Below are positions 4,962-56,042 of a stretch of 64,000 nt of DNA, in pieces. Below the pieces are notes generated by a model that had not been told where the DNA came from, searched no databases, and worked only from the letters and a program-made list of their open reading frames with translations. Within the stretch, counting starts at the first letter, position 1; every line of letters begins with the position of its first letter. This DNA comes from Phyllobates terribilis. Its lineage: Eukaryota. A program made the position numbers and the translations under genes. Where the stretch lies: NCBI RefSeq assembly GCF_046119375.1, contig NW_027362769.1:384338001-384402000 (forward strand). The letters run 5' to 3'.

Positions 4962-7900
4962 TCAGGGGTTACTGGGCCGGCTGGGTCTCATCTGGGAAGG
5001 CAGTGCTCCTTTGCTCTGAGCATGTGCACCATCTGCTGGACGGAGATAGAAATGCTTGTTAATAAAAACCAATGAAAATAATCATAAAATGTGTACGAGT
5101 AGAAAACCATGGCCGCCGTCTTCCATAAAAAGCACCACACCTGTCCACAAAGGTTATGTTCGGTATTACAGCCACTTATTCACCTCATTTAGCCGAGCTG
5201 CAATACCACACCCGACCAGTGGGTAGGTTGTGGCGCTGTTTGAGGTAGAAAGCGGCCATTTTTTTCATTTTCCTCCCCTTCTTCCAATAGTCATTACTTT
5301 CTTATTTCTCCATCCACGCAGGTGTAGGAGTACAGGCTGCTGCCGATATTTATGCTATGCAGCTGCCCAGGCATGCTGGGAGTTGTAGTTCTGCAACAGC
5401 TGGGGAGCCTCGATCTGATGCTGCTTAGTTATCTATGGGCAGGACTGCCACCCAGTGGTGACAAGTGGTATTACGTGTAAGGTCTCAGGTTTCTGTCCCT
5501 CCACCACCCTGCGGAGCAGCCCTCATCCCTGCAGAGGCTTGTGTGACCCGACTGTACCTGTCGGTGCCGGCTGCAGGTGTCCAGACAAGGATGGGCGGGG
5601 AATCGGCGTGGAATGATGGAGACCGCCGAGGATATCTAGACAGAGAAGGACCAGGGTGGGCACGTTGCACAATCTGTAACCACAAAGCTCCATATGGAAT
5701 AATGACAATGCCAGATGGCGGCACTTACTCCTCGGCAGTCCGTGGTTGAAGGTGCCTGGGGCCGGCCCGGTGACGATGGCGTCTTTCGACGCTCCGGCTT
5801 TTGGTGACTGTTCAGCGGTGAAGGACACGACGCGCAGGGGAAAGCTGTTCAGGGTGGACAGGACGCTCAGGGAGCCCGGGGCGGGCATCTTCCCTCCGTT
5901 CTGCTTGTAAGGTGGGGTCAGGATGGTCAGCGGAGGGGAGAACAGTCCGGGCCCAGTGCCCTTCTGTACCTGCGGGGGATACAAGCCATGTGCACATGGT
6001 CAGCAAATCACCCCCTCCCCCCACACCCTCCAACACACGGGCTGCCACCCAAACCCTCTCGAAACGCGGGCTGCCACCCCCGGCCTCGCTGTCCGCACCC
6101 TCCAATACACGGGCTGCCACCCCCGGCCTCACTGTCCGCACCCTCCAATACACGGGCTGCCACCCCCGGCCTCGCTGTCCGCACCCTCCAATACACGGGC
6201 TGCCACCCCCGGCCTCGCTGTCCACATCCTCCAATACACGGGCTGCCACCCCCGGCCTCTCTGTCCACACCCTCCAATACACGGGCTGCCACCCCTGGCC
6301 TCTCTGTCCGCACCCTCCAATACACGGGCTGCCACCCCCGGCCTCGCTGTCCGCACCCTCCAATACACGGGCTGCCACCCCCGGCCTCGCTGTCCACACC
6401 CTCCAATACACGGGCTGCCACCCCCGGCCTCGCTGTCCACACCCTCCAATACACGGGCTGCCACCCCCGGCCTCGCTGTCCACACTCTCCAATACACGGG
6501 CTGCCACCCCTGGCCTCGCTGTCCACACCCTCCAATACACGGGCTGCCACCCCCGGCCTCGCTGTCCACATCCTCCAATACACGGGCTGCCACCCCCGGC
6601 CTCTCTGTCCACATCCTCCAATACACGGGCTGCCACCCCCGGCCTCGCTGTCCGCACCCTCCAATACACGGGCTGCCACCCCCGGCCATCCTCTCCCCCC
6701 CCCCCGCACCCTACAACACACGAGCTGCCACCCAAACCCTCCCAACACGCGGGCTGCCACCCCCTCTTCCGGGCCACCCGCACCCTCCAACACACGGACG
6801 GCCACCGTCGGCCGCCCCCTCCCCCCGCACCCTCCTACACACAGGCTGCCACCCAAACCCTTCCCCCAACCACGTGGGCTATAACCCCCAAGACCCGGGC
6901 CTCCCCCTCCTACGCCCAGGCCACTTCCGCCCAAACCCAACACACACGCAGGCTGCCAACCCAGACGCCCTGGCCGCTTTCCCCCTCCCGGCACGCTGGC
7001 TGCCAACCCTCTGCGCCCAGACACCAGGGTCGCTTCCCTCTCCACCCCGACTGCTTCCTCCACACCCACTCACTCCCGACACCCAGACCATCCCTCTCCA
7101 CCTCAACACATGGGCTGTCAACCCCGAAGCCCGTGCCGTCTCTCTCCCAACTATAACACGCGGGCTACCACTTCCAGCACCCAGCCACCTCCCCCCACGT
7201 TAGAGGCAGGGGCTGGCTGTATAGCACTGCTGGCACCAGCTGCGTATGGAGGGCTCAGCGGCTCCGTACTCCCACCATGTATAAGTTGAAGACCCTGCAA
7301 TCTTGAAGGCAGGAGCGGGTAATAACCTCCTCTGCCTTCCTGCAGGGCTGTGCACGCATCGGCCGCTGGTCACACTTACGCTCACGTTCGATGCATTGCC
7401 TCCCACCATGGATGACGTTAGTAATTTAGCCACTCCTTGCGTCCCTCCTCCGCAGTCATGAGGAGCCATTAAGGTCAGCTTCTGGGGCGGGCGAGGGGAC
7501 ATCTTCATTGACATGGTGACGGGGTTATGGCTGGCGGGTGACGGGGCTTTGTTCAAAGTCACGGTGGCGGTGTGCAGCGGAGCGGGCGGCCGGTTCACAG
7601 CGCCCCTGTAGACCTGAGCTCCAGGGGGGCCGGGATTATTGGGGGGTTTGGACATGAATGCTGGAGACACTATGAGCTTGTGGCTGGTGCCAGCTGGAGA
7701 TGATGGAGGAGGAACGCCCTGGGGTTTGGGCGGTTTGGTCTGGGGGGCGAGAGGCTGCTGGGAGGGCGACGGTGCGAACACTTTGGCGCCACCGCTTTGG
7801 ATGGGGTGAGTGAAGCTGGCCTTGCTCGCTGGGTGGTTCACATGGTAGACATTGGGCGGCACAGACTGGTTTGCGGCTGGAGTCTTTGCAGGCCCAGTCT

Positions 7901-34900: not shown

Positions 34901-37900
34901 GCTGCCGCTTGTGTCATGGGAGGCCGACACATGGAGGGCGGATGCCACGGACTGTATACGTGTATATCTCTCTTCCAGGCGAGGTGGGTAACGCCGCCCG
35001 GATGATGCTCATCATTAACATGGTCCAGGGCAGCTTCATGGCCACGATAGCGGAGGGCATGACCCTGGCGCAGGTGACCGGCAGTCGCAGCAGACCCTGC
35101 TGGACATCCTGATCCAGAGCCAGCTCTCCAGTATTTTCCTGGACCAAAAGTGCCAAAGTAAGTAATAAATAATGCCTCCATCTCCCCCGTGAAATCCCCA
35201 ATGTCACGGCCTCCTTTTCTGCTCCCCTCCTGACCGTCGCTCTCTCCTCAGACATCCTGCAGGGGAACTTCAAACCAGACTTCTATCTAAAGTACATCCA
35301 GAAGGACCTGCGGCTCGCCATCGCATGGGGGACTCCGTCAACCACCCCACCCCTATGGCCGCCGCAGCTAACGAGGTGAGGCCGCTGCCGAGAAGTCAGA
35401 CTGTTGGGGGCGGGGAGGTACTCGGCACGATTTTCATGGCGTTTTAGTTCTGCATCTCACATGGTCACAGATTATAACCGCTGTGCGGAGCCCAAGGCGG
35501 CAGTGCTGGCCCTGCGTCATATACAGACAGCCTGAAAAGGGTGGCCCTGGTCCTCCATTGAAGGGAATAGGACTGAGCTTCAGGACCAACCATCACTTAC
35601 GTTGCACCCTTTTATAGGGCTTACACTACCATGGCTGTTTGCTTTCAGCAGCAGCGCCACCCCTGATGTCAGGTTGTGTCTGTTATGCACCTCAGCCCCA
35701 TTGAAGTGAGCTGAGCCGCCATACTTCAGATAATGTGTACAGCGCCCCCTCTCCTCTCCCTTGCGTGCGGCGCCCCCCTCTCCTCTCCCTTGCGTGCGGC
35801 GCCCCCCTCTCCTCTCCCTTGCGTGCGGCGCCCCCCTCTCCTCTCCCTTGCGTGCGGCGCCCCCTCTCCTCTCCCTTGCGTGCGGCGCCCCCCCTCTCCT
35901 CTCCCTTGCGTGCGGCGCCCCCCCTCTCTCTCCCTTGCGTGCGGCGCCCCCCTCTCCTCTCCCTTACGTGCGGCGCCCCCCTCTCCTCTCCCTTGCGTGC
36001 GGCGCCCCCCTCTCCTCTCCCTTGCGTGCGGCGCCCCCTCTCCCTTGCGTGCGGCGCCCCCTCTCCCTTGCGTGCGGCGCCCCCTCCCTCTCCCTTGCGT
36101 GCGGCGCCCCCCTCTCCTCTCCCTTGCGTGCGGCGCCCCCCTCTCCTCTCCCTTGCGTGCGGCGCCCTCCTCTCCCTTGCGTGCGGCGCCCCCCTCTCCC
36201 TTGCGTGCGGCGCCCCCTCTCCCTTGCGTGCGGCGCCCCCTCTCCCTTGCGTGCGGCGCCCCCTCTCCCTTGCGTGCGGCGCCCCCCTCTCCCTTGCGTG
36301 CGGCGCCCCCCTCTCCCTTGCGTGCGGCGCCCCCTCTCCCTTGCGTGCGGCGCCCCCCTCTCCTCTCCTTGCGTGCGGCGCCCCCTCTCCCTTGCGTGCG
36401 GCGCCCCCCTCTCCTCTCCCTTGCGTGCGGCGCCCCCCTCTCCTCTCCCTTGCGTGCGGCGCCCCCCTCTCCTCTCCCTTGCGTGCGGCGCCCCCCTCTC
36501 CTCTCCCTTGCGTACGGCGCCCCCCTCTCCCTTGCGTGCGGCGCCCCCTCTCCCTTGCGTGCGGCGCCCCCTCTCCTCTCCCTTGCGTGCGGCGCCCCCT
36601 CTCCTCTCCCTTGCGTGCGACGCCCCCTCTCCTCTCCCTTGCGTGCGGCGCCCCTCTCCTCTCCCTTGCGTGCGGCGCCCCCCTCTCCTCTCCCTTGCGT
36701 GCGGCGCCCCCCTCTCCTCTCCCTTGCGTGCGGCGCCCCCCTCTCCTCTCCCTTGCGTGCGGCGCCCCCCTCTCCTCTCCCTTGCGTGCGGCGCCCCCCT
36801 CTCCTCTCCCTTGCGTGCGGCGCCCCCCTCCCCTCTCCCTTGCGTGCGGCGCCCCCTCTCCCTTGCGTGCAGCGCCCCCCCTCTCCCTTGCGTTCAGATC
36901 CCCCTCTCCCTTGCGTGCAGCGCCCCCCTCTCCTCTCTCTTGCGTGCAGCGCCCCCTCTCTCTTGCGTGCAGCGCCCCCTCTCTCTTGCGTGCAGCGCCC
37001 CCTCTCCCTTGCGTGCAGCGCCCCCTCTCCCTTGCGTGCAGCGCCCCCTCTCCCTTGCGTGCAGCGCCCCCTCTCCCTTGCGTGCAGCGCCCCCTCTCCC
37101 TTGCGTGCAGCGCCCCCTCTCCCTTGCGTGCAGCGCCCCCTCTCCCTTGCGTGCAGCGCCCCCTCTCCCTTGCGTGCAGCGCCCCCTCTCCCTTGCGTGC
37201 AGCGCCCCCCTCTCCTCTCCTTGCGTGCAGCGCCCCCTCTCCTCTCCCTTGCGTGCAGCGCCCCCCTCTCCTCTCCCTTGCGTGCAGCGCCCCCCTCTCC
37301 TCTCCCTTGCGTGCAGCGCCCCCTCTCCCTTGCGTGCAGCGCCCCCTCTCCCTTGCGTGCAGCGCCCCCCTCTCCCTTGCGTGCAGCGCCCCCTCTCCCT
37401 TGCGTGCAGCGCCCCCTCTCCTCTCCCTTGCGTGCAGCGCCCCCTCTCCCTTGCGTGCAGCGCCCCCCTCTCCCTTGCGTGCAGCGCCCCCTCTCCCTTG
37501 CGTGCAGCGCCCCCTCTCCCTTGCGTGCAGCGCCCCCCTCTCCCTTGCGTGCAGCGCCCCCCTCTCCCTTGCGTGCAGCGCCCCCCTCTCCCCTCCCTTG
37601 TGTGCAGCGCCCCCCTCTCCTCTCCCTTGCGTGCAGCGCCCCCTCTCCTCTCCCTTGCGTGCAGCGCCCCCCTCTCCTCTCCCTTGCGTGCAGCGCCCCC
37701 CTCTCCTCTCCCTTGCGTGCAGCGCCCCCCTCTCCTCTCCCTTGCGTGCAGCGCCCCCTCTCCCTTGCGTGCAGCGCCCCCTCTCCCTTGCGTGCAGCGC
37801 CCCCTCTCCCTTGCGTGCAGCGCCCCCTCTCCCTTGCGTGCAGCGCCCCCTCTCCTCTCCCTTGCGTGCAGCGCCCCCTCTCCTCTCCCTTGCGTGCAGC

Positions 37901-39591
37901 GCCCCCTCTCCCTTGCGTGCAGCGCCCCCTCTCCCTTGCGTGCAGCGCCCCCTCTCCCTTGCGTGCAGCGCCCCCTCTCCCTTGCGTGCAGCGCCCCCTC
38001 TCCCTTGCGTGCAGATCCCCCCTCTCCCTTGCGTGCAGATCCCCTCTCCCTTGCGTTCAGATCCCCCCTCTCCTCTCCCTTGCGTGCAGCGCCCCCCTCT
38101 CCTCTCCCTTGCGTGCAGCGCCCCCTCTCCCTTGCGTGCAGCGCCCCCTCTCCCTTGCGTGCAGCGCCCCCTCTCCCTTGCGTGCAGCGCCCCCCTCTCC
38201 CTTGCGTGCAGCGCCCCCTCTCCTCTCCTTGCGTGCAGCGCCCCCCTCTCCTCTCTCTTGCGTGCAGCGCCCCCCTCTCCTCTCTCTTGCGTGCAGCGCC
38301 CCCTCTCCTCTCTTGCGTGCAGCGCCCCCTCTCCTCTCTTGCGTGCAGCGCCCCCCTCTCCTCTCTTGCGTGCAGCGCCCCCCTCCTCTCCCTTGCGTGC
38401 AGCGCCCCCCTCTCCCTTGCGTGCAGCGCCCCCTCTCCCTTGCGTGCAGCGCCCCCCTCTCCCTTGCGTGCAGCGCCCCCCTCTCCCTTGCGTGCAGCGC
38501 CCCCCTCTCCCTTGCGTGCGGCGCCCCCTCTCCCTTGCGTGCGGCGCCCCCCTCTCCCTTGCGTGCGGCGCCCCCCTCTCCCTTGCGTGCGGCGCCCCCT
38601 CTCCCTTGCGTGCGGCGCCCCCCTCTCCCTTGCGTGCGGCGCCCCCCTCTCCCTTGCGTGCGGCGCCCCCTCTCCCTTGCGTGCGGCGCCCCCCTCTCCC
38701 TTGCGTGCGGCGCCCCCTCTCCTCTCCCTTGCGTGCGGCGCCCCCCTCTCCCTTGCGTGCGACGCCCCCTCTCCTCTCCCTTGCGTGCGACGCCCCCTCT
38801 CCCTCTCCCTTGCGTGCGGCGCCCCCCTCTCCTCTCCCTTGCGTGCGGCGCCCCCCTCTCCTCTCCCTTGCGTGCGGCGCCCCCCTCCTCCNNNNNNNNN
38901 NNNNNNNNNNNNNNNNNNNNNNNNNNNNNNNNNNNNNNNNNNNNNNNNNNNNNNNNNNNNNNNNNNNNNNNNNNNNNNNNNNNNNNNNNNNGTGCAGCGC
39001 CCCCCTCTCCCTTGCGTGCAGCGCCCCCTCTCCCTTGCGTGCAGCGCCCCCTCTCCCTTGCGTGCAGCGCCCCCTCTCCCTTGCGTGCAGCGCCCCCTCT
39101 CCCTTGCGTGCAGCGCCCCCTCTCCCTTGCGTGCAGCGCCCCCTCTCCCTTGCGTGCAGCGCCCCCCTCTCCCTTGCGTGCAGCGCCCCCCTCTCCTCTC
39201 CCTTGCGTGCAGCGCCCCCTCTCCCTTGCGTGCGGCGCCCCCCTCTCCCTTGCGTGCGGCGCCCCCTCTCCCTTGCGTGCGGCGCCCCCTCTCCCTTGCG
39301 TGCGGCGCCCCCTCTCCCTTGCGTGCGGCGCCCCCCTCTCCTCTCCCTTGCGTGCGGCGCCCCCCTCTCCTCTCCCTTGCGTGCGGCGCCCCCCTCTCAT
39401 CTCCCTTGCGTGCGGCGCCCCCCTCTCATCTCCCTTGCGTGCGGCGCCCCCCTCTCCTCTCCCTTGCGTGCGGCGCCCCCTCTCACCCCCGTGTCTTTTT
39501 TTTTTTTCCCCGACAGGTCTACAAAAGAGCGAAAGCATTGGACCAATCTGACAACGACATGTCCGCCGTGTACAGGGCCTACATCCACTAG
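25197..39591 (+). CDS. GLYR1: GLYR1/NPAC/NP60 (PWWP, AT-hook, LSD2-binding linker, inactive beta-hydroxyacid-dehydrogenase fold), 16 exons, about 527 aa after correcting 7 single-base indels
   Basis: Exons: 25197-25237, 26246-26281, 26551-26630, 27456-27597, 28344-28505, 28649-28735, 29706-29759, 30435-30485, 30569-30642, 31137-31235, 32262-32373, 32536-32637, 32708-32870, 34979-35157, 35252-35375, 39517-39591 (TAG). Motifs [69 protein letters not shown]. As given, the sequence is frameshifted in exons 2, 3, 10, 11, 14 and 15. Confidence 0.93.
25430..25720. repeat. 41-bp G-rich minisatellite (about 7 copies) in GLYR1 intron 1
   Basis: Unit ggggatctggtgtgagggactggggaggaaggatccagtca. Confidence 0.9.
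26807..27390. repeat. Same 86-bp satellite family as 22060-22887, opposite orientation, GLYR1 intron 3
   Basis: Reads gtaatgtatgtacacagtgactgcaccagcagaatagtgagtgcagctctggagtataatacaggatgtaactcaggatca, the reverse complement of the unit at 22 kb. Some units carry an extra cagtacaggat. Confidence 0.95.
32960..34945. repeat. 41-43-bp minisatellite (about 47 copies) filling GLYR1 intron 13
   Basis: Unit ggctggcacatggagggcggctgtcgcttgtgtgtgtcatgga, with variants changing along the array. Source of the 551-aa spurious ORFs. Confidence 0.95.
35745..39485. repeat. 24-29-bp pyrimidine-rich minisatellite (>120 copies) filling GLYR1 intron 15; contains the assembly gap
   Basis: Unit cgcccccctct(cctct)cccttgcgtgc(g/a)g. 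Source of the 1272-1418 aa spurious ORFs. Confidence 0.95.
38892..38991. other. Assembly gap (100 N, placeholder length)
   Basis: Exactly 100 N inside the minisatellite. Confidence 1.
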
Positions 39592-42339: not shown

Positions 42340-45300
42340 CTCAAAGTAAGGAACTCTTCATCTCTCCCTCCATTCTCCCCATTCATCTCACCACCTTCTC
42401 AGAACTATTCCTCAACATTTAATCCTGTGTCTCTAAGCACAGACAGTAACCTCATGCTCTCTTCTGCTCCCACCTGCTAACACTTTCTCTGCTCCTCCTC
42501 ACTGCTGGAGATATCTCTCCAAATCCTGGTCCTCCTCACCACATCCCCACAGTCACTTCCGCCTCCTATCCACGATCTATCACAAACTGTCGCAACCCTT
42601 CGAACCTTATACCCATCCACCCAGGCCCCACTAACAGGAGCTCTATGGAACGCTCGCTCTGTCTGCAACAAACTTTCCTACATCCATGAACTTTTCATTA
42701 CTAACAAACTTTCCTTCCTCGGCATCACTGAAACCTGTCTCACGCCCTCCGACACGGTCTCTCCAGCTGCACTTTCATACGGTGGATTCCACCTTTCTCA
42801 AATCCCCCACCCCAAATGTGGAGGTGTAGGCTTTCTCCTGTCTGATACCTGTGCCTTCACCCAAATCCCACTGCCACCCTCTGATACTCTCCCCTCTTTT
42901 GACGTGCACTATGTGCACATCTACTCCCCCCTCCAATCTCCAACTGGCTGTCATTTACCGCCTCCAGGACCAGCCACCACTTCACCACCTGGCTACTTCA
43001 TTTCCTTTCCGCTGACATCCCCACTATCATCATGGGTGACTTCAACATCCCCATCGACACTTCTCTCTCAGCTGTCTCTAAGCTTCTATCCCTCACTTCC
43101 TCCTTTGGCCTTGCTCAATGGTCTTCAACCCCCACTCACAAAGATGGCCACACTCTGGACTTCATCTTCACCTGCTTTTGTTCCCTATCTAACCTAACTC
43201 ACCTCTCCCTCTCTCTGACCACAACTTACATACATTCGCTACCCTCTCCTCTCCAGGTGCACATGCCCCACTCCACAAACTTGCACACCCTCGCAGAAAT
43301 CTCAAACACCTTGACACCTTGACTTACACTGACTCTCTGAATCCCTCCTCCCTCTTACAGACAAATTCCTTACACAATGCAGATGCTGCTGCCGCTTTAT
43401 ATAACACCACAATAGCTGCAGCTCTCGATTTGGTCGCCCCTCTGTGTGAGCTTTGGTATGTGTCAATCAACAGGTAACCCTGGCACACCAACCTGACTAA
43501 AGAACTGAGACGGACCTCCAGGGTTGCTGAGCGGAGATGGGAAAGGTCCCACCCCAACGAGCACTTCATCACATTCTAACAGACCCTCACTACCTTCAAG
43601 TCCGCACTCACTACAGCAAAACAAACCTACTTCTCATCTCTCATATCCTTCCTGTCTCACAACCCTAAACAGCTATTCAACACTTTCAATTCTCTCCTCC
43701 GTCCCCCAGCGCCACCTCCCTCTCCTCTCAGTCGAAGACTTGGTATCAATCAGACAATGCTTTTACCTAAAGTCCCCCCAGCTCCGACTCAGTCCTCCAA
43801 AACCAGCTTCTCCACCATTACACCATTTCCTCTTTACTCTCCAAATCACACCTCACCACCTGTGAACTTGACCCAATCCTGTCCCACCTCATCCCTAACC
43901 TCACCAGTCTTCATCTCAACCCTAACCTGCCTCATCAACCTGTCACTAACAGCTGGTGTCCTCATGCTTCAAACATGCCTCGATCACACCCATCCTCTCT
44001 AACTAGCTATCCCCCATATCACTTCTTGCTTACGCTTCAAAACTACTGGAACACGTCCACCTTGAACTGTCCTCCCACCTCCCCTCCTGTTCCCTCTTTG
44101 ACCGCCTCCAATCTGGCTTCCGACCGCACCACTCTACTGAAACTGCCCTGACTAAAGTCACCAACTACCTACTAACCGCCAAATCCAAGCGACACTACTC
44201 CATCCTCCTCCTCCTGGACCTGTCATCTGCCTTTGACACAGTGGACCATTCCCTCTTACTACAGACTCTCATCTCTCGGCATCACAGACTTGGCCCTATC
44301 CTGGATCTCCTTATACCTAACAGACCGGACATTCAGCGTCTCCCACTCATGCACCACCTCCTCATCTCACCCCCTATCTGTCGGTGTCCCCCAAGGTTCA
44401 GTTCTAGGACCTCTGCACTTCTCCATCTACACCTTTGGCCTGGGACAACTCATAAGAGTCTCATGGCTTTCAGTACCAACTCTATGCTGACGACACACAG
44501 ATCTACCTCTCTGGACCCGATATCTCCTCCCTACTAACCAGAATCCCACAATGTCTGTCCGCCATCTCATCCTTCTTCTCTGCTAGATTTCTAAAGCTTA
44601 ACATGGATAAAAATGAATTCATCATCTTTCCCCCATCTCACTCAGCACCCCCCGATCTGACCTATCCATCAAAGTCAATGGCTGTTCACCCTCCCCAGTC
44701 CTGCAAGCTCGCTTCCTCAGGGTAACCCTGGACTCTGATCTCTCCTTCAAACCACATATCCAAGCCCTTTCCACTTCCTGCCGACTCCAACTCAAAAATA
44801 TTCCCCGGATCCGCACATTCCTCAACCACGAATCTGCAAAAACACTAGTGCATGCCCTCATCATCTCCCGCCTTGACTACTGCAACCTCCTGCTCTGTGG
44901 CCTCCCCTCTAACACTCTCGCACCCCTCCAATCTATCCTAAACTCTGCTGCCCGACTAATCCACCTGTCCCCCCGCTATTCCCCGACCTCTCCTCTCTGT
45001 CAATCCCTTCACTGGCCCCCCATTGCCCAGAGACTCCAGTTCAAAACCCTAACCATGGCATACAAAGCCACCCACAACCTGTCTCCTCTATACATCTGTG
45101 ACCTAGTCTCCCGGTACATACCTGCACGCAACCTCCGATCCTCACAAGATCTCCTGCTCTACTCCCCTCTTATCTCCTCTTCCCACAATCGCATACAAGA
45201 TTTCTCCCGTGCTTCCCCCCCTACTCTGGAACTCTCTACCCCAACATATCAGACTCTCCTGGACCATGGAAGCCTTCAAAAGGAGCCTGAAGACCCACCT

Positions 45301-45540
45301 CTTCCGACAAGCCTACAACCTGCAGTAACCACCGCTCCACCATACCGCTGCATGACCAGCTCTTCCCTCACCTACTGTATCCTCACCCATTTCTTGTAGA
45401 CTGTGAGCCTTCGCGGGCAGGGTTCTCTCTCCTCCTGTTCCAGTCGCTGCCTTGTATTTGTTCAAGATTATTCTAATTCTTTTTATATGTATACCCCTTT
45501 ATCACATGTAAAGTGACATGGAATAAAGGGCGCTATAATA
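42340..45540 (+). mobile_element. L2-clade LINE, near-complete ORF2 (APE endonuclease + RT), degraded
   Basis: APE: ALWNARSVCNK...GITET...IMGDFNIPID...PTHKDGHTLD. RT: [17 protein letters not shown]...[12 protein letters not shown]...[11 protein letters not shown]...YADDTQIY. C-terminus HALIISRLDYCNLLLCGLP...LHWPPIAQR. L2-type 3' end gtaaagtgacatggaataaagggcgctataata. Many frameshifts. Confidence 0.92.
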
Positions 45541-48459: not shown

Positions 48460-48710
48460 GCCTCCAGCCAATCAGAACACTGAGAAACCAGCACTGGGCG
48501 TGGTTTGAGGGACCTCACAACAACACAGCGCCGCTGCTCCAATCAGCGAGCGGACTGGTAATGATTCTAACCAATGAACTAACGCCTGCCTCTTCGCTCA
48601 GCCAATCAGGGAGCGTTGTTTGATGTCCTCCGTCCAATGGGATGAGAGGGGCTGGGCTTGTACCGATAGCATCGTCTCGGAGGTGTCGTCTGCTTGCAGA
48701 GAAGCGCAGG
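48460..48710 (+). promoter_or_regulatory. ROGDI CpG-island promoter with five same-strand CCAAT boxes
   Basis: CCAAT at 48468, 48539, 48571, 48602 and 48634. CpG-rich, no TATA, 77 bp from the last box to the ATG. Confidence 0.8.
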
Positions 48711-51700
48711 ATGGCGACGGCTGCAGCGGCGGCGAGCGGTGCGGAGCGGGGCGTGCTGGTGAGTGTCCGTGACGTGGATGTGACTGGCCATCACACCCGT
48801 CCTTATTATCAGCCGCTCTTGTCCTGACCCCAAGAGCTGACAATCTATTCCCTTCCACTTGTGCATTATAACCGCCTCTGACCGCCATATTGTCGCCATG
48901 GTGACCACGTTACCGTTTTTCATCCTTGTTTATTTTCGCAGCGGATCCTCGTATCCGTGACGACGACCGCCGTCCGCCTGTGACGGTCACGGTGATGCCG
49001 GCGTGCAGCCACTCGTCCTCTCGCCATATGGCGCCGCTCTATCGCCGTTTCCGCTTTTTTATTACTTTATAGACGGGCGGTCACATGGTATAGGATCAAA
49101 TATGGCGTCCGCGGAGAGATCGGGACCCCCGGACGCCACTTTTCGGCAAATTGGTAAATAAGTCGTCCTCTCGTGGCGTCATGTGACCACATTTAAGGTA
49201 GAATGCCCCCCCACCCTTCACCACCAGGTGGCGAAATGTCAGTAAAAAGGACGGAAAATCCAGATTATTGGAATTCCTGTAATCTGGAATATTCCTAGGA
49301 ACAAGTGGTGCTAAAAAACTACAACTCCCAGCATGCCCTCGCCACCCGCTACTTTGCCGAGAGCTGTCGTTTCGCCAGTTCTCTGGAGTATCAGATGCCA
49401 GTGTAATCCGGCGGCTTTAGAGCGACTGGCCCTTTAAGTAATCTCTGCAGACGAGGCGTTCTCTCACATGCAGCGGCCGTCACATGATGATGAGAGCAGT
49501 AGTGGTTGTAGTTATCGCACAATAGGAGGGGAGCGTTATCCCGCCCCTGATCTCATTGATAATTACTCAAGTGGCTGATAACAGAGAGCAATAAATGGGC
49601 TGAAGTTACTTAAAGCTTTGGTGACAACTCCTTTCCCAGTGGCATTGGAGGGGTCGGTTCATTCAGTCGTTCCCCCTGGGGTTGTGGCACTGGTATATTG
49701 TCCTCCTGGTGGGGGCGCTGCGGAGCCTCGTTCTTCTTTTTTGGATCTGATCTCTGTTTTGTTGCTGCAATTTTGACCCGATCACAACGCTGACTGCGGA
49801 CTACAACCCACAACATGGTGTCTGTGTACACAACACACCAACATGTGCAGACCGGACACATCCGGGCTCCGGGCCGCCCTCCCCGGGAGACGCCTGACAC
49901 CCAAAACACAGCAAAAAGCCTCGCAGAGAGGGATAGAGGAGAGGTGCAGCGCGGGAGAAGCCTCGTAGGAGAGGGATAGAGGAGAGGCGCAGCGCGGGAG
50001 AAGCCTCGTAGGAGAGGGATAGGGGAAAGGTTCAGCGCGGGAGAAGCCTCGTAGGAGAGGGATAGAGGAAAGGTGCAGTGCGGGAGAAGCCTCGTAGGAG
50101 AGGGATAGAGGAAAGGTGCAGCGCTGGAGAAGCCTCGTAGGAGAGGGATAGGGGAAAGGTGCAGTGCGGGAGAAGCCTCGTAGGAGAGGGATAGAGGAAA
50201 GGTGCAGTGTGGGAGAAGCCTCGTAGGAGAGGGATAGAGAAAAGGTGCAGTGCAGGAGAAGCCTCGTAGGAGAGGGATAGAGAAAAGGTGCAGTGCAGGA
50301 GAAGCCTCGTAGGAGAGGGATAGAGGAAAGGTGCAGCGCGGGAGAAGCCTCGTAGGAGAGGGATAGAGGAAAGGTGCAGCGCGGGAGAAGCCTCGTAGGA
50401 GAGGGATAGAGGAAAGGTGCAGCGCGGGAGAAGCCTCGTAGGAGAGGGATTGAGGAAAGGTGCAGCGCGGGAGAAGCCTCGTAGGAGAGGGATAGAGGAA
50501 AGGTGCAGCGCGGGAGAAGCCTCGTAGGAGAGGGATAGAGGAAAGGTGCAGCGCGGGAGAAGCCTCGTAGGAGAGGGATAGAGGAAAGGTGCAGCGCGGG
50601 AGAAGCCTCGTAGGAGAGGGATAGAGGAAAGGTGCAGCGCGGGAGAAGCCTCGTATGAGAGGGATAGAGGAGAGGTGTAGCGCGGGAGAAGCCTCGTAGG
50701 AGAGGGATAGAGGAGAGGTGTAGCGCGGGAGAAGCCTCGTAGGAGAGGGATAGAGGAGAGGTGTAGCGCGGGAGAAGCCTCGTAGGAGAGGGATAGAGGA
50801 GAGGCGCAGCACGGGAGAAGCCTCGTAGGAGAGGGATAGAGGAGAGGCGCAGCGCGGGAGAAGCCTCGTAGGAGAGGGATAGAGGAGAGGTGTAGCGCAG
50901 CAGAAGCCTCGTAGGAGAGGGATAGAGGAGAGGTGTAGCACGGGAGAAGCCTTGTAGGAGAGGGATAGAGGAAAGGCGCAGCGCGGGAGAAGCCTCGTAG
51001 GAGAGGGATAGAGGAGAGGCGCAGCGCGGGAGAAGCCTCGTAGGAGAGGGATAGAGGAGAGGCGCAGCGCGGGAGAAGCCTCGTAGGAGAGGGATAGAGG
51101 AGAGGTGTGGAGAGGGATAGAGGAGAGGTGTAGCGCGGGAGAAGCCTCTTAGGAGAGGGATAGAGGAGAGGTGTAGCGCAGGAGAGGGATAGAGGAGAGG
51201 TGCAGCGCGAGAGAAGCCTCGTAGGAGAGTGATAGAGAGGCGCAGCGCGGGAGAGGGATAGAGGAGAGGTGCAGCGCGAGAGAAGCCTCGTAGGAGAGGG
51301 ATAGAGGAAAGGTGCAGCGTGGGAGAAGCCTCGTAGGAGAGGGATAGAGGAGAGGTGCAGCACGAAAGAAGCCTCGTAGGAGAGTGATAGAGAGGCGCAG
51401 CGCGGGAGAAGCCTCGTAGGAGAGGGATAGAGGAGAGGCGCAGCGCGGGAGAAGCCTCGTAGGAGAGGGATAGAGGAGAGGTGCAGCGCGGGAGAAGCCT
51501 CGTAGGAGAGGGATAGAGAGGTGCAGCGCGGGAGAAGCCTCGTAGGAGAGGGATAGAGGAGAGGTGCAGCGCGGGAGAAGCCTCGTAGGAGAGGGATAGA
51601 GGAGAGGTGCAGCGCGAGAGAAGCCTCGTAGGAGAGGGATAGAGGAGAGGTGCAGCGCGAGAGAAGCCTTTTACACCTGAGATGCTGCAGGGATGACCGT

Positions 51701-54700
51701 TCCTAATCTTTGCCCAGTCGGTCAGGTGATGTGGTGGGTGATAGCGCGGAGATGTCGGTATAATCATTACCCCGGAAACAATGGGCGCAGAGGAGCCAAG
51801 ATTACATCAGGAATGAGTTACAGGATCAGAGCAGGAAGAATGGAGCCAGATCTGCAGCAGGCGGCACAGCGGTCACCGGCTCCTGGATCTACCCTCTGGG
51901 CCTCTGTGACTCCTCCTTATTGGGGGGGCACATACTTTGGGCAATGTAGCCTCAGGGTCTCGAGCTTCGGTTTGCGGTGGGGGAGGCACTGCTGCACTGA
52001 TACACGTCTGATCTATAGCGTCCCCCCACTGGTTTCACTGTTCGCTATTTTGCAGGAGGAAGAGTTCAAATGGCTCCTGAAGGAAGAGGTGCACTCCGTC
52101 CTCAAGCAGCTGCAGGACATCCTGAAGGTCAGCGCACGGACACCGCACGTCACATGACATGTCAGACAAGATGGCCGCCTGGACCTGTGTAGCAGAAGCA
52201 GTTCTTCCAGGGGGTCTCCTGAGTGAGGGAGGGGGGTGGCGGGTTTACCTTTTATAGGCGCCATACACCTTAGAGGAACGTTCTTCCATCTCCCCAATAC
52301 TTGGCTGAGGATTCATATATTCTCAGTGGGAAGAGGAACTGAAGCCCCTGCCAGACCAATGTCCACCCTCCGGGCCCCTGTGCCTGCCCTGCGGACCCCT
52401 TAGTCCGTCCTCCAACCCTCCAGGCCCCTGTGCCTGCCCTGTGGACCCCTTAGTCCGTCCTCCAACCCTCCAGGCCCCTGTGCCTGCCCTGTGGACCCCT
52501 TAGTCCGTCCTCCCACCCTCCAGGCCCCTGTGCCCGCCCTCCGGACCCCTTAGTCCGCCCTCCAGGCCCCTGTGCCTGCCCTCCACACCCCTTAGTCCGT
52601 CCTCCAGGTCCTTGTGCCTGCCCTCCGGACCCCTTTGTCTGCCCTCTCACCTTCCAGGCCCCCCTGTCTGCCCTCCGGGCCCTGTGCCCACCCTGACGTC
52701 TGCAGGATTACTGTGTAGGAGTCTTCGGAGATGAGTTTGTCTTTGTGTCCCTCTCGGTTCTTGTAGGACGCCTCCCGGAGGTTCACCCTCCCCAGCGGAG
52801 CAGCAGACGGCGCCTCCAAGCAGGAGAACTTTGTCCTAGGCAGCTCCAGGTGATAGCCGGGGCCGGGGGGCTACACTGACGCCGTGGCCGTGGACGGCAC
52901 TGACGCTGTAGCACTGACTCTGCCCGTTTTTGGTTGCAGCACAGACCAGGTGAAGGGCGTCCTGACCCTACAAGGAGACACCCTGTGTCAGGCGGTGAGT
53001 ATGTTCCCGTTCACTGACAGCCAGCAGGGGGCTTGTCACTCGCAGTACAGGGGGCATAGATGTGGCCAGGGGGGCTCATCAGTTTCTTGGCTTCACAGGA
53101 AGTGAACCTGAAGGTGGCGAGGACCAATCAGACGCTGCACTTTGCATTCCGGGATGACAAGCAATGGAAGATGCAGCAGGTGGGTGCGCGGCGTCCGGAC
53201 CTCCCTGGGGTCCTGATACATCAGAGCTGGATCCGTCAGCAGCAGCTTTCTCTGCTGCAGATGCTGCGGCGGCTCTTTTCTCGCAGGGAAATGTAAATGT
53301 CTTTGGTTCCTCAGATTCAGGATGCCAGGAACCACGTGAACCAGGCGATCTACCTGCTCACCAACCGGGGCGAGAACTACACCTTCCAGACCGGGTCAGA
53401 GGTGCTGAAGGTGAGCGTGCCCCCCGGGGCGACCCCCACACCAGGGGGCCCAGATCAGGGGATGTGACCCGTCCGTCATCTCTTCTCCGCAGCTGATGGA
53501 CGCCGTGATGCTGCAGCTGACCCGAGCCCGCAATCGCCTCACCACGCCGGCGACCATGACGCTACCAGAGGTGGCCACCAGCGGCCTGACGGTAACACTA
53601 CATGCATCTGCAGCGCGGCTGGGAGGCTGCTGTGGGACTACAAGCCCCAGCATGCACAGATGGGCGCAGATTGTCATGACATGCTGGGACTTGTAGTTCT
53701 GGATCAGCTGGCATAGGCTGAGGAGTGAGCTGAACCCACCTCTTCTCTTCTCTTAGAAAATGTTCTCCCCGTCGCTCCCCGCGGACGTCCTGCTCAACTT
53801 CTATGTGAACGTGAACAAGCTCTGCCTCCTGGTCTACCAGCTGCACGCTCTGCAGCCCAACTCCACCAAGGTGAGACACTGACACGACCCCGCAGCTCTG
53901 CAGCCCAACTCCGCCAAGGTGAGACACTGACACGACCCCGCAGCTCTCCAGCCCAACTCCACCAAGGTGAGACACTGACACGACCCCGCAGCTCTGCAGC
54001 CCAACTCCACCAAGGTGAGACACTGACACGACCCCGCAGCTCTGCAGCCCAACTCCACCAAGGTGAGACACTGACACGACCCCGCAGCTCTGCAGCCCAA
54101 CTCCACCAAGGTGAGACACTGACACGACCCCGCAGCTCTGAAGCCCAGCTCCACCAAGGTGAGACACTGACACGACCCCGCAGCTCTGCAGCCCAACTCC
54201 ACCAAGGTGAGACACTGACACGACCCCGCAGCTCTGCAGCCCAACTCCACCAAGGTGAGACACTGACACGACCCCGCAGCTCTGCAGCCCAACTCCACCA
54301 AGGTGAGACACTGACACGACCCCGCAGCTCTGCAGCCCAACTCCACCAAGGTGAGACACTGACACGACCCCGCAGCTCTGCAGCCCAACTCCACCAAGGT
54401 GAGACACTGACACGACCCCGCAGCTCTGCAGCCCAACTCCACCAAGGTGAGACACTGACATGACCCCGCAGCTCTGCAGCCCAACTCCACCAAGGTGAGA
54501 CACTGACACGACCCCGCAGCTCTCCTCCTCTCACTATTGTTTCCTTCCTCTCTAGAATTTCCGTCCTGCCGGCAGCTCCGTCCTGCACAATCCCGGAGCC
54601 ATGTTGTGAGTATGAGGGGGGCAGATACTTATGTACCAGCAGAGCGACCAGTGCGCTGTGCCGCCTCATCCTCGTTGAGCGGATCGTGCCGCACACTGCA

Positions 54701-55340
54701 GATAGGGGGGTCTCATCTCAGCATGTGAGGGGGTGTTACTAGTATATGATCTCTGGGGGTCCGGTCTTTGGGACCCCACTAATCCTAAGAATGAAGGACC
54801 CCAGTGTTGCCCTGGTGCTTTTCAAGTGACTGGACTTCAAAGAGCGAGCGCTGCTCAGCAGGAAAAAACAACCGCACTGTGGCTTCTTCATTCACAGTAG
54901 GGGTCCCAGTGGTCGGACCCCCAGGGATCATTAAGTATCAGTATCATGTCCCGGACTGAGATGGGAACGCCCCTTTAAAGGGTGAGAGCCCGGTTCTGCC
55001 CTGAGTGGAGCCACTGTTATTTTACCAGCAGCTTTGGCTGTGACTGGAGGGGCTGCTTTCTGCCTACAGCTGTGTTTTCTGCCTCCTCACAGCGAGCTGA
55101 ACACCCAGCGCTTCGAGGTCAGCCATGTCCACAAGGTGGAGTGCGTGGTCCCGTGGCTGAACGACGCCCTGGTCTTCTTCACCGTCTCGCTGCAGCTCTG
55201 CCAGCAACTCAAGGACAAGGTGCGTGTCCTCCCATCTGTCGCCACAGACCTCCCGGCCTCCGGGGGCGCTGCTGACCGGCGCTGTTTCTCCTCCACAGAT
55301 CTCCATATTCTCCAGCTACTGGAACTTCCGAGCGTATTGA
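48711..55340 (+). CDS. ROGDI: Protein rogdi homolog (Rabconnectin-3/RAVE-associated), 11 exons, 867 nt, 288 aa, intact
   Basis: Exons: 48711-48758, 52056-52127, 52767-52849, 52940-52994, 53099-53179, 53315-53410, 53493-53591, 53757-53870, 54556-54605, 55093-55219, 55299-55340 (TGA). Motifs [84 protein letters not shown]. Confidence 0.96.
49915..51670. repeat. 43-bp purine-rich minisatellite (about 40 copies) in ROGDI intron 1
   Basis: Unit agaagcctcgtaggagagggatagaggagaggtgcagcgcggg. Explains the 443-661 aa minus-strand ORFs. Confidence 0.95.
52370..52690. repeat. About 50-bp C-rich minisatellite in ROGDI intron 2
   Basis: Unit ccctccaggcccctgtgcctgccctgtggaccccttagtccgtcctccaa, about 6 decaying copies. 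Confidence 0.85.
53847..54523 (+). repeat. 48-bp minisatellite spanning the ROGDI exon 8/intron 8 junction (14 donor copies)
   Basis: Unit gctctgcagcccaactccaccaag|gtgagacactgacacgaccccgca. AAG|GT at 53870 + 48n, up to 54494. Confidence 0.97.
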
Positions 55341-56042
55341 GTCTGGCTGACGGCAGCCATGATGGGAGAAGCGCGGCGGCGCCTCCTCGGGGGTATGTCT
55401 GCTCCCAGCATGGACTGTGGTTCGCTGGATGGGGCTGGCCCTGGCCTGTAGGACCCTCAGTGTGTAACGTCCTCACGTCGGCGACCCTCTGCGTCCGGGC
55501 CGAGCATGCACGTCGTCATGTGATGTACATTCCTTATTATTTATTACATTCAGCGGGTAAGAAGGGAATCGTCCATATTCTCAGTGCAATACGGGGTCAG
55601 CGGGGCGGCCACCGCTCCTGCACAGGTAGTCGTCCGGCTTTCCCAAACTCCTGCGTGTCACATCTGCAGCAGACATACCCTACTCCCTGCCAGGGGGTCG
55701 CTCTCATTCATAGCCATAAATGCTGGAAAGTGATCTCTACTTTGTGCTGCAAATCTCGAGCATGCTTGCTGTAAAGCTGCAGTTACCATGTTCTGACACC
55801 AGGTGGCGCCAGTGTAGTTTTTTTTTTCCCCTTCTATTGTCTGTGTCCATGCCCCTCCTGTTCTCTGTATACTGTCTGTCCTTTTATATACAGTAGAGCT
55901 GTCTTTATGTAGCCACGAGGAACAAGATGACACCTGCACTCCCCTCCCCCGACCGCGCGGCACTATTCACCATCACTTTTATCGTCACCGTCCGCTCACT
56001 TATGTTCTTCCTTTGTAAATAGAGTAATGGAAATGTGCTTGA

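What the first reader, a model, noticed from the sequence alone, without database searches (positions are those of the whole stretch)
53847..54555. Minisatellite built from an exon-intron junction: 14 tandem copies of the ROGDI exon 8 splice donor, each followed by a stop
Seen: the 48-bp unit is the last 24 nt of exon 8 plus the first 24 nt of intron 8, giving near-identical CCAAG|GTGAGA donors at 53870, 53918, ... 54494. Reading past the first donor gives GTG AGA CAC TGA (stop at codon 220), so any downstream donor yields a premature stop upstream of later junctions. Each unit also has two AGs (ccccgcag, ctgcag), defining potential 23-nt or in-frame 15-nt (PNSTK) micro-exons. Without the 13 extra units the intron would be only 61 nt. 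Inference: 13 identical decoy donors compete with one productive donor, so repeat number could act as a heritable dial on ROGDI output via NMD. It is also a snapshot of exon/intron gain by junction duplication.
Basis: partly seen in the sequence, partly recalled or inferred. Interest (0 to 1): 0.7.

Follow-up and report, generated by a model that had tools for sequence, protein, structure and literature searches.

The report
Silent splice-donor repeats in frog ROGDI
An intron of a poison frog's ROGDI gene is padded with 13 extra tandem copies of the preceding exon end and its splice signal, but the RNA I could inspect splices only at the first copy, as in repeats of this kind already known from human genes such as F7, so it is real but ordinary.

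Summary
A 48-bp unit repeats 14.1 times at 53847-54523 with 98% identity and no indels. It starts 24 nt before the end of ROGDI exon 8, so the donor AAG|GTGAGA occurs 14 times, each followed by an in-frame TGA.

All 11 exon translations match the Phyllobates terribilis RefSeq ROGDI protein exactly. A 1629-nt spliced RNA contig from the same species joins the first donor (53870) directly to the final acceptor (54556). It carries no extra unit and no PNSTK micro-exon. The RefSeq model has the same junction.

Array-containing RNA sits at the level of unspliced intron. DNA contigs break at the array edges and show about 10-12 times single-copy depth, so an assembly artefact is unlikely.

The kind is already described. 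Minisatellites whose first monomer spans an exon-intron boundary occur in human F7, 6-16/IFI6, CBS, LMNB2 and PDGF. In F7 only the most upstream donor is used (PMC1557585).

Minisatellites fill 23% of this window. The scan has already found the same kind of array on other DNA of this genome (EMC1, NKAP, BSPRY, WDR62, rnf40).

The NMD-dial idea is untested. What RNA evidence exists points against it. Low interest.

The parts
48642..55340 (+). ROGDI coding region, 11 exons: 48642-48758, 52056-52127, 52767-52849, 52940-52994, 53099-53179, 53315-53410, 53493-53591, 53757-53870, 54556-54605, 55093-55219, 55299-55340. The conserved MATAAAA start is at 48711.
   Evidence: Nine GT..AG joints in RNA contigs of X8 and X10. 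Every exon translation is an exact substring of P0126, XP_073504663.1, Phyllobates terribilis rogdi homolog.
53757..53870 (+). ROGDI exon 8 (114 nt, phase 0), ending ...LQPNSTK
   Evidence: Pfam Rogdi_lz positions 157-192, E 9.6e-8; joints 53590>53756 and 53868>54554.
53847..54523 (+). 48-bp minisatellite, 14.1 copies. The first unit spans the exon 8/intron 8 boundary.
   Evidence: TRF, 98% matches, no indels; unit table.
53868..53876 (+). Productive 5' splice site AAG|GTGAGA, cut after 53870
   Evidence: X8 spliced contig skips 53871-54555 (685 nt, GT..AG); the RefSeq protein has the junction K|N.
53880..53882 (+). In-frame TGA, 4th codon past the first donor. It is repeated in every unit.
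   Evidence: Read directly (ORF 53760..53882).
53916..54500 (+). 13 further identical AAG|GTGAGA donor copies, cut sites at 53918 + 48n up to 54494. They are silent in the RNA seen. Each unit also has CTGAC (branch-point-like) and two AGs.
   Evidence: no variant in any donor 9-mer; no joint from any of them in 4 runs.
54519..54523 (+). GCTCT, the same 5 nt that open the unit at 53847-53851. This microhomology flanks the original 48-nt segment and is the likely slippage point of the first duplication (inference).
   Evidence: the 15th register matches only in its first 5 bases.
54524..54555 (+). Unique 3' end of intron 8: pyrimidine tract and acceptor ...ttccttcctctctag|
54556..54605 (+). ROGDI exon 9 (50 nt), [16 protein letters not shown]
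   Evidence: Joints on both sides; exact match to P0126 residues 240-255.

Best explanation
This is a young, locally made minisatellite that began as a duplication of a 48-bp segment spanning the exon 8/intron 8 boundary of ROGDI, in a poison-frog genome that makes such arrays very readily. The first duplication probably arose by slippage between two GCTCT pentamers 48 nt apart (inferred). Later expansion would be by unequal exchange or slippage (inferred). The spliceosome takes the most upstream of the identical donors, the one that closes the properly defined 114-nt exon 8. All 13 extra units are therefore removed as part of a 685-nt intron and the protein is unchanged (shown for the dominant mRNA). 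The extra donors, the in-unit TGA and the weak internal AGs are passengers. The array is a tolerated, probably length-variable, neutral insertion of the F7-IVS7 type and not a regulatory device.
For: The array structure, the 14 identical donors and the microhomology come. The X8 1629-nt spliced contig joins 53870 to 54556, and exon 8 and exon 9 are adjacent in the record (record positions 971-1083 and 919-970), so no extra unit or PNSTK copy is present. No joint starts at any other donor in the two RNA-like runs. No joints at all appear in the two DNA runs. The RefSeq protein of Phyllobates terribilis is identical exon by exon and has ...LQPNSTK|NFRPAG. No member of its 90% cluster carries a +5n-aa insert at that junction. 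The X10 array contig has depth 27.6, against 2-2.9 for single-copy intron and about 900 for exons (depth is a weak measure). The internal acceptors have poor pyrimidine tracts, unlike the real one. Micro-exons of 15 or 23 nt are poorly defined (established knowledge). The RNA is structure-poor (z +6.2 against shuffles), so the decoys need no masking to be explained. Minisatellites cover 22.9% of the window and 37% of the gene span. The chance that at least one of the gene's three arrays engulfs a whole donor is about 0.23. For precedent, F7 IVS7 pseudo-sites are functional but only the most upstream donor is used, and LMNB2 and PDGF behave the same way (PMC1557585). The same kind of array was noted in several other genes of this genome (AI notes, treated as leads only).
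Against: All RNA evidence comes from assembled contigs, which drop rare isoforms. NMD would also deplete decoy-donor products, so a few percent of unproductive splicing cannot be excluded. In human 6-16 and CBS the second and third donors are used as well as the first (PMC1557585). The other introns of this gene are 79-165 nt, which suggests intron definition, and that could favour donors nearer the acceptor. Copy-number variation between individuals was not measured. The ancestral intron length of 61 nt is inferred, not observed, because orthologous frog loci could not be fetched.
Confidence: 0.85

Rival explanations
1. Decoy-donor dial. A meaningful fraction of transcripts splice at one of donors 2-14, include the TGA and are destroyed by NMD, so array length tunes ROGDI output heritably.
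For: All 14 donors are identical and match the consensus at 8 of 9 positions. The TGA lies upstream of two later exon junctions, so such products would be NMD targets (50-55-nt rule, established knowledge). The other introns are short, which hints at intron definition. For the human CBS boundary VNTR, a paper title reports an association with reduced enzyme activity (Lievers 2001, seen only as a citation).
Against: The dominant mRNA uses donor 1 and RefSeq has a single model. Array RNA is at the unspliced-intron level in X10. F7 minigene work shows that identical downstream sites do not compete.
Confidence: 0.08
2. Micro-exon cassette. Units act as complete mini intron-exon modules (GTGAGA donor, CTGAC branch point, AG), so some mRNAs carry one or more in-frame 15-nt PNSTK exons and give ROGDI isoforms of variable length.
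For: Each unit holds the donor, a CTGAC branch-point-like motif 21 nt before the second AG, and a 15-nt in-frame segment. Donor-to-acceptor distances of 81, 129 ... nt across units are spliceable (inference).
Against: No such joint occurs in any run, and exon 8 and exon 9 are adjacent in the X8 contig. No +5n-aa ROGDI appears in the protein cluster. The first AG after the branch point would give the frame-shifting 23-nt version. The pyrimidine tracts are poor. Exons under about 50 nt need special enhancers (established knowledge).
Confidence: 0.03
3. Assembly artefact. The array, or its length, is a mis-assembly of a single junction.
For: The exact copy number of 14 rests on the assembly only. 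Short-read contigs cannot span 677 bp.
Against: Four units carry private substitutions at distinct places. Contigs from two DNA samples of two studies end exactly at the array edges, at 53876 and 54494. X1 array unitigs have depth 37-44 against 3.5-3.8 for single-copy sequence. A 78-nt contig in a third sample (X10) spans more than one unit head to tail.
Confidence: 0.03

Closest known systems
Human F7 intron 7 (IVS7) 37-bp VNTR minisatellite (Borensztajn et al. 2006, PLoS Genet, PMC1557585)
   Same: The first monomer spans the exon-intron boundary, and the authentic donor is followed by identical pseudo-sites. Only the most upstream donor is used in normal mRNA, and use of a later site retains intron sequence.
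   Different: F7 has 5-9 copies of 37 bp holding only 4 nt of exon. Here there are 14 copies of 48 bp holding 24 nt of exon plus a branch-point-like motif and two AGs. F7 pseudo-site function and polymorphism were shown experimentally; here neither was tested. Every ROGDI decoy gives a stop codon, whereas some F7 ones do not.
Human 6-16 (IFI6) intron 2 and CBS intron 13 boundary minisatellites (Turri 1995; Yang 2000; Lievers 2001; as summarised in PMC1557585)
   Same: A boundary-spanning minisatellite reiterates the donor: 25 pseudo-sites in 6-16, and 15-20 repeats in CBS.
   Different: [quoted passage not shown] No such use is seen here in the assembled RNA. The original papers were not held in the library, so the details are second-hand.
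Human LMNB2 (100-bp, 10-15 repeats) and PDGF intron 4 (81-bp, 16-18 repeats) boundary minisatellites (PMC1557585)
   Same: Many copies are present and only the authentic donor is used.
   Different: The units are longer and the genes are human. No sequence relation exists.
Other junction-derived arrays of this same frog genome noted by the scan (EMC1 introns 16 and 20, NKAP, BSPRY, WDR62, rnf40)
   Same: They share the architecture and the genome. Where RNA was seen, the first donor was in use (AI notes that I did not re-test).
   Different: The genes, unit lengths (33-60 bp and more) and copy numbers (7-107) differ. In rnf40 the extra donors are GT>GC. All of these arose independently.
Intron gain by tandem duplication of an AGGT-containing exon segment (Rogers model; Zhuo et al. 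2007 PNAS 'introns from tandem arrays', known here only through citations)
   Same: A tandem duplication carries splice signals.
   Different: No new intron is created here; a pre-existing GT..AG intron is lengthened.

Membership tests
Exon-intron-boundary (splice-donor) minisatellite, F7 IVS7 type | Tandem array whose first monomer spans an exon-intron boundary | tested here: met
   The array starts at 53847, 24 nt before the RNA-verified exon end at 53870.
Exon-intron-boundary (splice-donor) minisatellite, F7 IVS7 type | The authentic donor sequence is reiterated unchanged in the intron | tested here: met
   All 14 donor 9-mers are AAG|GTGAGA.
Exon-intron-boundary (splice-donor) minisatellite, F7 IVS7 type | Normal mRNA uses the most upstream donor (or the first few) only | tested here: met
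   X8 spliced contig joint 53870>54556 with no extra unit; the RefSeq model has the same junction. This holds for dominant RNA only, because the evidence is contigs.
Exon-intron-boundary (splice-donor) minisatellite, F7 IVS7 type | Copy number varies between individuals (VNTR) | tested here: inconclusive
   A second DNA sample (X5) holds array words, but contigs collapse the repeat and depth is not a copy number.
Exon-intron-boundary (splice-donor) minisatellite, F7 IVS7 type | Pseudo-sites are functional when upstream ones are inactivated | not testable with these tools
   This needs minigene mutagenesis as in PMC1557585.
NMD-coupled unproductive splicing switch (poison site/exon) | A stop-containing isoform made by the alternative site is detectable in RNA | tested here: not met
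   No joint from donors 2-14 or to internal AGs in the two RNA-like runs; the array contig is at the unspliced-intron level. Rare isoforms cannot be excluded from contigs.
NMD-coupled unproductive splicing switch (poison site/exon) | The isoform rises when NMD is blocked, and the element is conserved among related species | not testable with these tools
Intron gain by tandem duplication (Rogers model) | The duplication creates an intron where the exon was continuous | tested here: not met
   Removing the 13 extra units leaves an intact 61-nt GT..AG intron with its own pyrimidine tract and acceptor.

The most novel reading that the evidence does not exclude
The 13 extra units are not fully silent. 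A small share of ROGDI pre-mRNA would splice at downstream donors and be degraded by NMD, or would include in-frame 15-nt PNSTK micro-exons. If so, alleles with different copy numbers would give heritably different ROGDI output or protein length. Together with the many similar arrays in this genome, that would make Phyllobates terribilis a natural allelic series for testing how the spliceosome chooses among identical donors.
Probability: 0.08. Interest if true: 0.45.

Novelty: new member of a known kind. Interest (0 to 1): 0.2.

Why it matters
For ROGDI itself it matters little, because the protein and the main mRNA are unchanged. The locus is one more natural instance of the "many identical donors, one acceptor" arrangement that was used in human F7 to argue for 5'-to-3' oriented selection of splice donors. 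Here there are more copies (14), a longer exonic part per unit and a stop in each unit. This frog genome seems to hold many independent examples, so it could serve as a natural test set for splice-site choice, for minisatellite birth at microhomologies and for intron lengthening. As an annotation warning, gene predictors and short-read aligners may misplace the exon 8-9 junction among 14 equivalent sites.

Tried and rejected
**Orthologous intron 8 in other frogs.** I tried to fetch it for Anomaloglossus and Ranitomeya with the look-up of encoding contigs.

**RNA structure masking the downstream donors.** I rejected this. The 849-nt exon 8-intron 8-exon 9 RNA folds worse than shuffles (-175.7 against -224.5 kcal/mol, z +6.2).

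**PNSTK-insert isoforms among database proteins.** None turned up. The longer dendrobatid ROGDI entries owe their length to N-terminal extensions (P0121, P0126) or to a retained intron 6 (P0015), not to the exon 8/9 junction.

**Original papers.** Zhuo 2007 (PMC1783408) and Turri 1995 (PMC306954) are not held. A link between F7 repeat number and expression, which I recall from Pinotti 2000, could not be verified and I do not rely on it.

**Copy number in a second individual.** Contig depth could not give it, because the contigs collapse the array.

**Searches left out.** Exons were checked one at a time by reference, and the whole-protein comparison used the database protein P0126. The large representative-protein search was not used, because the word search and Pfam settled the gene.

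Full report
**What is there**

The window holds a 48-bp tandem array at 53847-54523. It has 14.1 copies, 98% matches, no indels and a TRF score of 1319.

- In the register, nine units equal the consensus.
- The remaining units carry five private substitutions: unit 2, unit 3, unit 7 (two changes) and unit 13.
- None of these substitutions falls in the 9-nt 5' splice-site window. AAG|GTGAGA therefore occurs 14 times, with cut sites at 53870 + 48n up to 54494.
- After the 14th unit only GCTCT still matches. The same pentamer opens the unit in the exon. The original 48-nt segment was thus flanked by a 5-nt direct repeat, which is a plausible slippage point for the first duplication (inference).

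**The gene**

The exon ending at 53870 translates to [38 protein letters not shown]. It scores above Pfam's gathering threshold for Rogdi_lz.

A word search used the stop-free ORF that contains exon 10, scored on that exon only. It returned vertebrate ROGDI proteins. The 90% cluster of the best hit contains XP_073504663.1 of Phyllobates terribilis (P0126).

Each of the 11 exon translations of the window, taken one exon at a time, is an exact substring of P0126. Anomaloglossus, Ranitomeya and Dendrobates proteins differ at a few residues. I therefore take the window to be P. terribilis ROGDI on the + strand.

- Introns are 3297, 639, 90, 104, 135, 82, 165, 685, 487 and 79 nt, and all are GT..AG.
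- The array's exon is exon 8.

**RNA and DNA reads**

Twenty public runs of the same species hold part of the stretch. I laid two DNA-like runs (X1, X5; different samples and studies) and two RNA-like runs (X8, X10; different studies) on 52000-55900. All are Logan contigs.

- *Main splice form.* X8 has one 1629-nt contig (depth 70.7) with nine GT..AG joints, none of which appears in the DNA runs. One joint skips 53871-54555 (685 nt). In the record, the exon 8 piece (positions 971-1083) abuts the exon 9 piece, so the mRNA has exactly one copy of the exon-8 tail and no micro-exon.
- *Other donors.* No joint starts at any of donors 2-14 or ends at any internal AG in either RNA run.
- *Array RNA level.* X10 has a 78-nt unspliced array contig (53951-54028) at depth 27.6. 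Nearby single-copy intron contigs sit at 2-2.9 and exons at about 880-920. That ratio is what pre-mRNA alone gives when 14 copies collapse. The tool warns that contig depth is a poor measure, so I use this only as a hint.
- *DNA support for the array.* X1 and X5 contigs stop at 53876 and resume at 54494, the array edges. X1 array unitigs have depth 37-44 against 3.5-3.8 for flanks. Together with the private substitutions, this makes an assembly artefact unlikely. The exact number 14 still rests on the assembly.

**Why the first donor**

The first donor is the only one that closes a normal exon: 114 nt, behind a strong acceptor (cttctcttctcttag). The other 13 have only 24 nt of exon-like sequence upstream.

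The internal AGs follow purine-interrupted tracts. They would define 15- or 23-nt exons, which are poorly recognised (established knowledge).

The RNA is unusually unstructured (z +6.2), so masking by structure is not the explanation.

The closest experimental system is the human F7 IVS7 37-bp minisatellite. It showed that identical downstream pseudo-sites are functional yet do not compete. The most upstream intact donor is always chosen, and exon skipping grows as that donor moves away (PMC1557585). The same paper lists further boundary minisatellites:

- LMNB2 and PDGF, where only the authentic donor is used.

**Is it more than chance**

Minisatellites (period 15 or more, 4 or more copies) cover 22.9% of this window and 37% of the ROGDI span. 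Arrays lie in introns 1, 2 and 8. With ten donors in about 4.7 kb of de-expanded gene, the chance that at least one of three seeds engulfs a whole donor is about 0.23.

Earlier notes of this scan list the same architecture in EMC1 (twice), NKAP, BSPRY, WDR62 and rnf40 of this genome. Where RNA was seen, the first donor was in use. These are unchecked AI notes that I used as leads. The human precedents they named I verified in PMC1557585.

**Verdict**

This is a new member of a known kind and most likely a tolerated by-product of repeat-prone DNA.

Four things remain open:

- low-level decoy or micro-exon use;
- copy-number polymorphism;
- the age of the array;
- whether the ancestral intron was really 61 nt.

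Noticed in passing
window 1-64000 (blocks at 6067, 22060, 24060, 25415, 26811, 32962, 33511, 35753, 45836, 49916, 52365, 53847, 60012, 63052): Fourteen minisatellite blocks (periods 23-242 bp, up to 146 copies) cover 22.9% of the window. The ROGDI junction array is the most homogeneous of them (98%).
   Followed up: partly
window 49916-51669 and 52365-52676: ROGDI introns 1 and 2 each hold their own unrelated minisatellite (43-bp and 50-bp units). Both lie inside their introns and do not touch a splice junction.
   Followed up: partly
window 48642-48758: The RefSeq ROGDI model of P. terribilis (311 aa) starts at an upstream in-frame ATG (48642). This adds 23 residues that no other frog ROGDI has apart from a similar extension in Dendrobates tinctorius. 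The conserved start MATAAAA is at 48711, so the extension is probably an annotation choice.
   Followed up: partly
window 35753-39488: A 3.7-kb array of a 23-bp C-rich unit (about 146 copies) contains a run of N, seen as about 34 X in the translations.
   Followed up: no
window 54533: One X5 DNA contig leaves the reference after 54533, inside the pyrimidine tract of intron 8, with 13 unmatched letters. It may be an allele with a different array flank or a contig error.
   Followed up: no
window 52687, 53347, 55380: There are single-base differences between the window and other individuals: C>T at 52687 in intron 2 (X5), G>T at 53347 at the third base of an Ala codon in exon 6 (X5), and C>G at 55380 in the 3' UTR (X5 and X10). 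They could serve as markers for allele-specific expression.
   Followed up: no
P0015 (Ranitomeya imitator, 316 aa): This 'unnamed protein product' carries a 28-residue insert between the exon 6 and exon 7 sequences, which looks like a retained 84-nt intron 6. The RefSeq model of the same species (P0124, 288 aa) lacks it.
   Followed up: no
window 42900-45400: Several + strand ORFs (for example 44233-44490 and 44848-45399) look like pieces of a decayed retrotransposon with reverse-transcriptase-like motifs. I did not check them against any family library.
   Followed up: no
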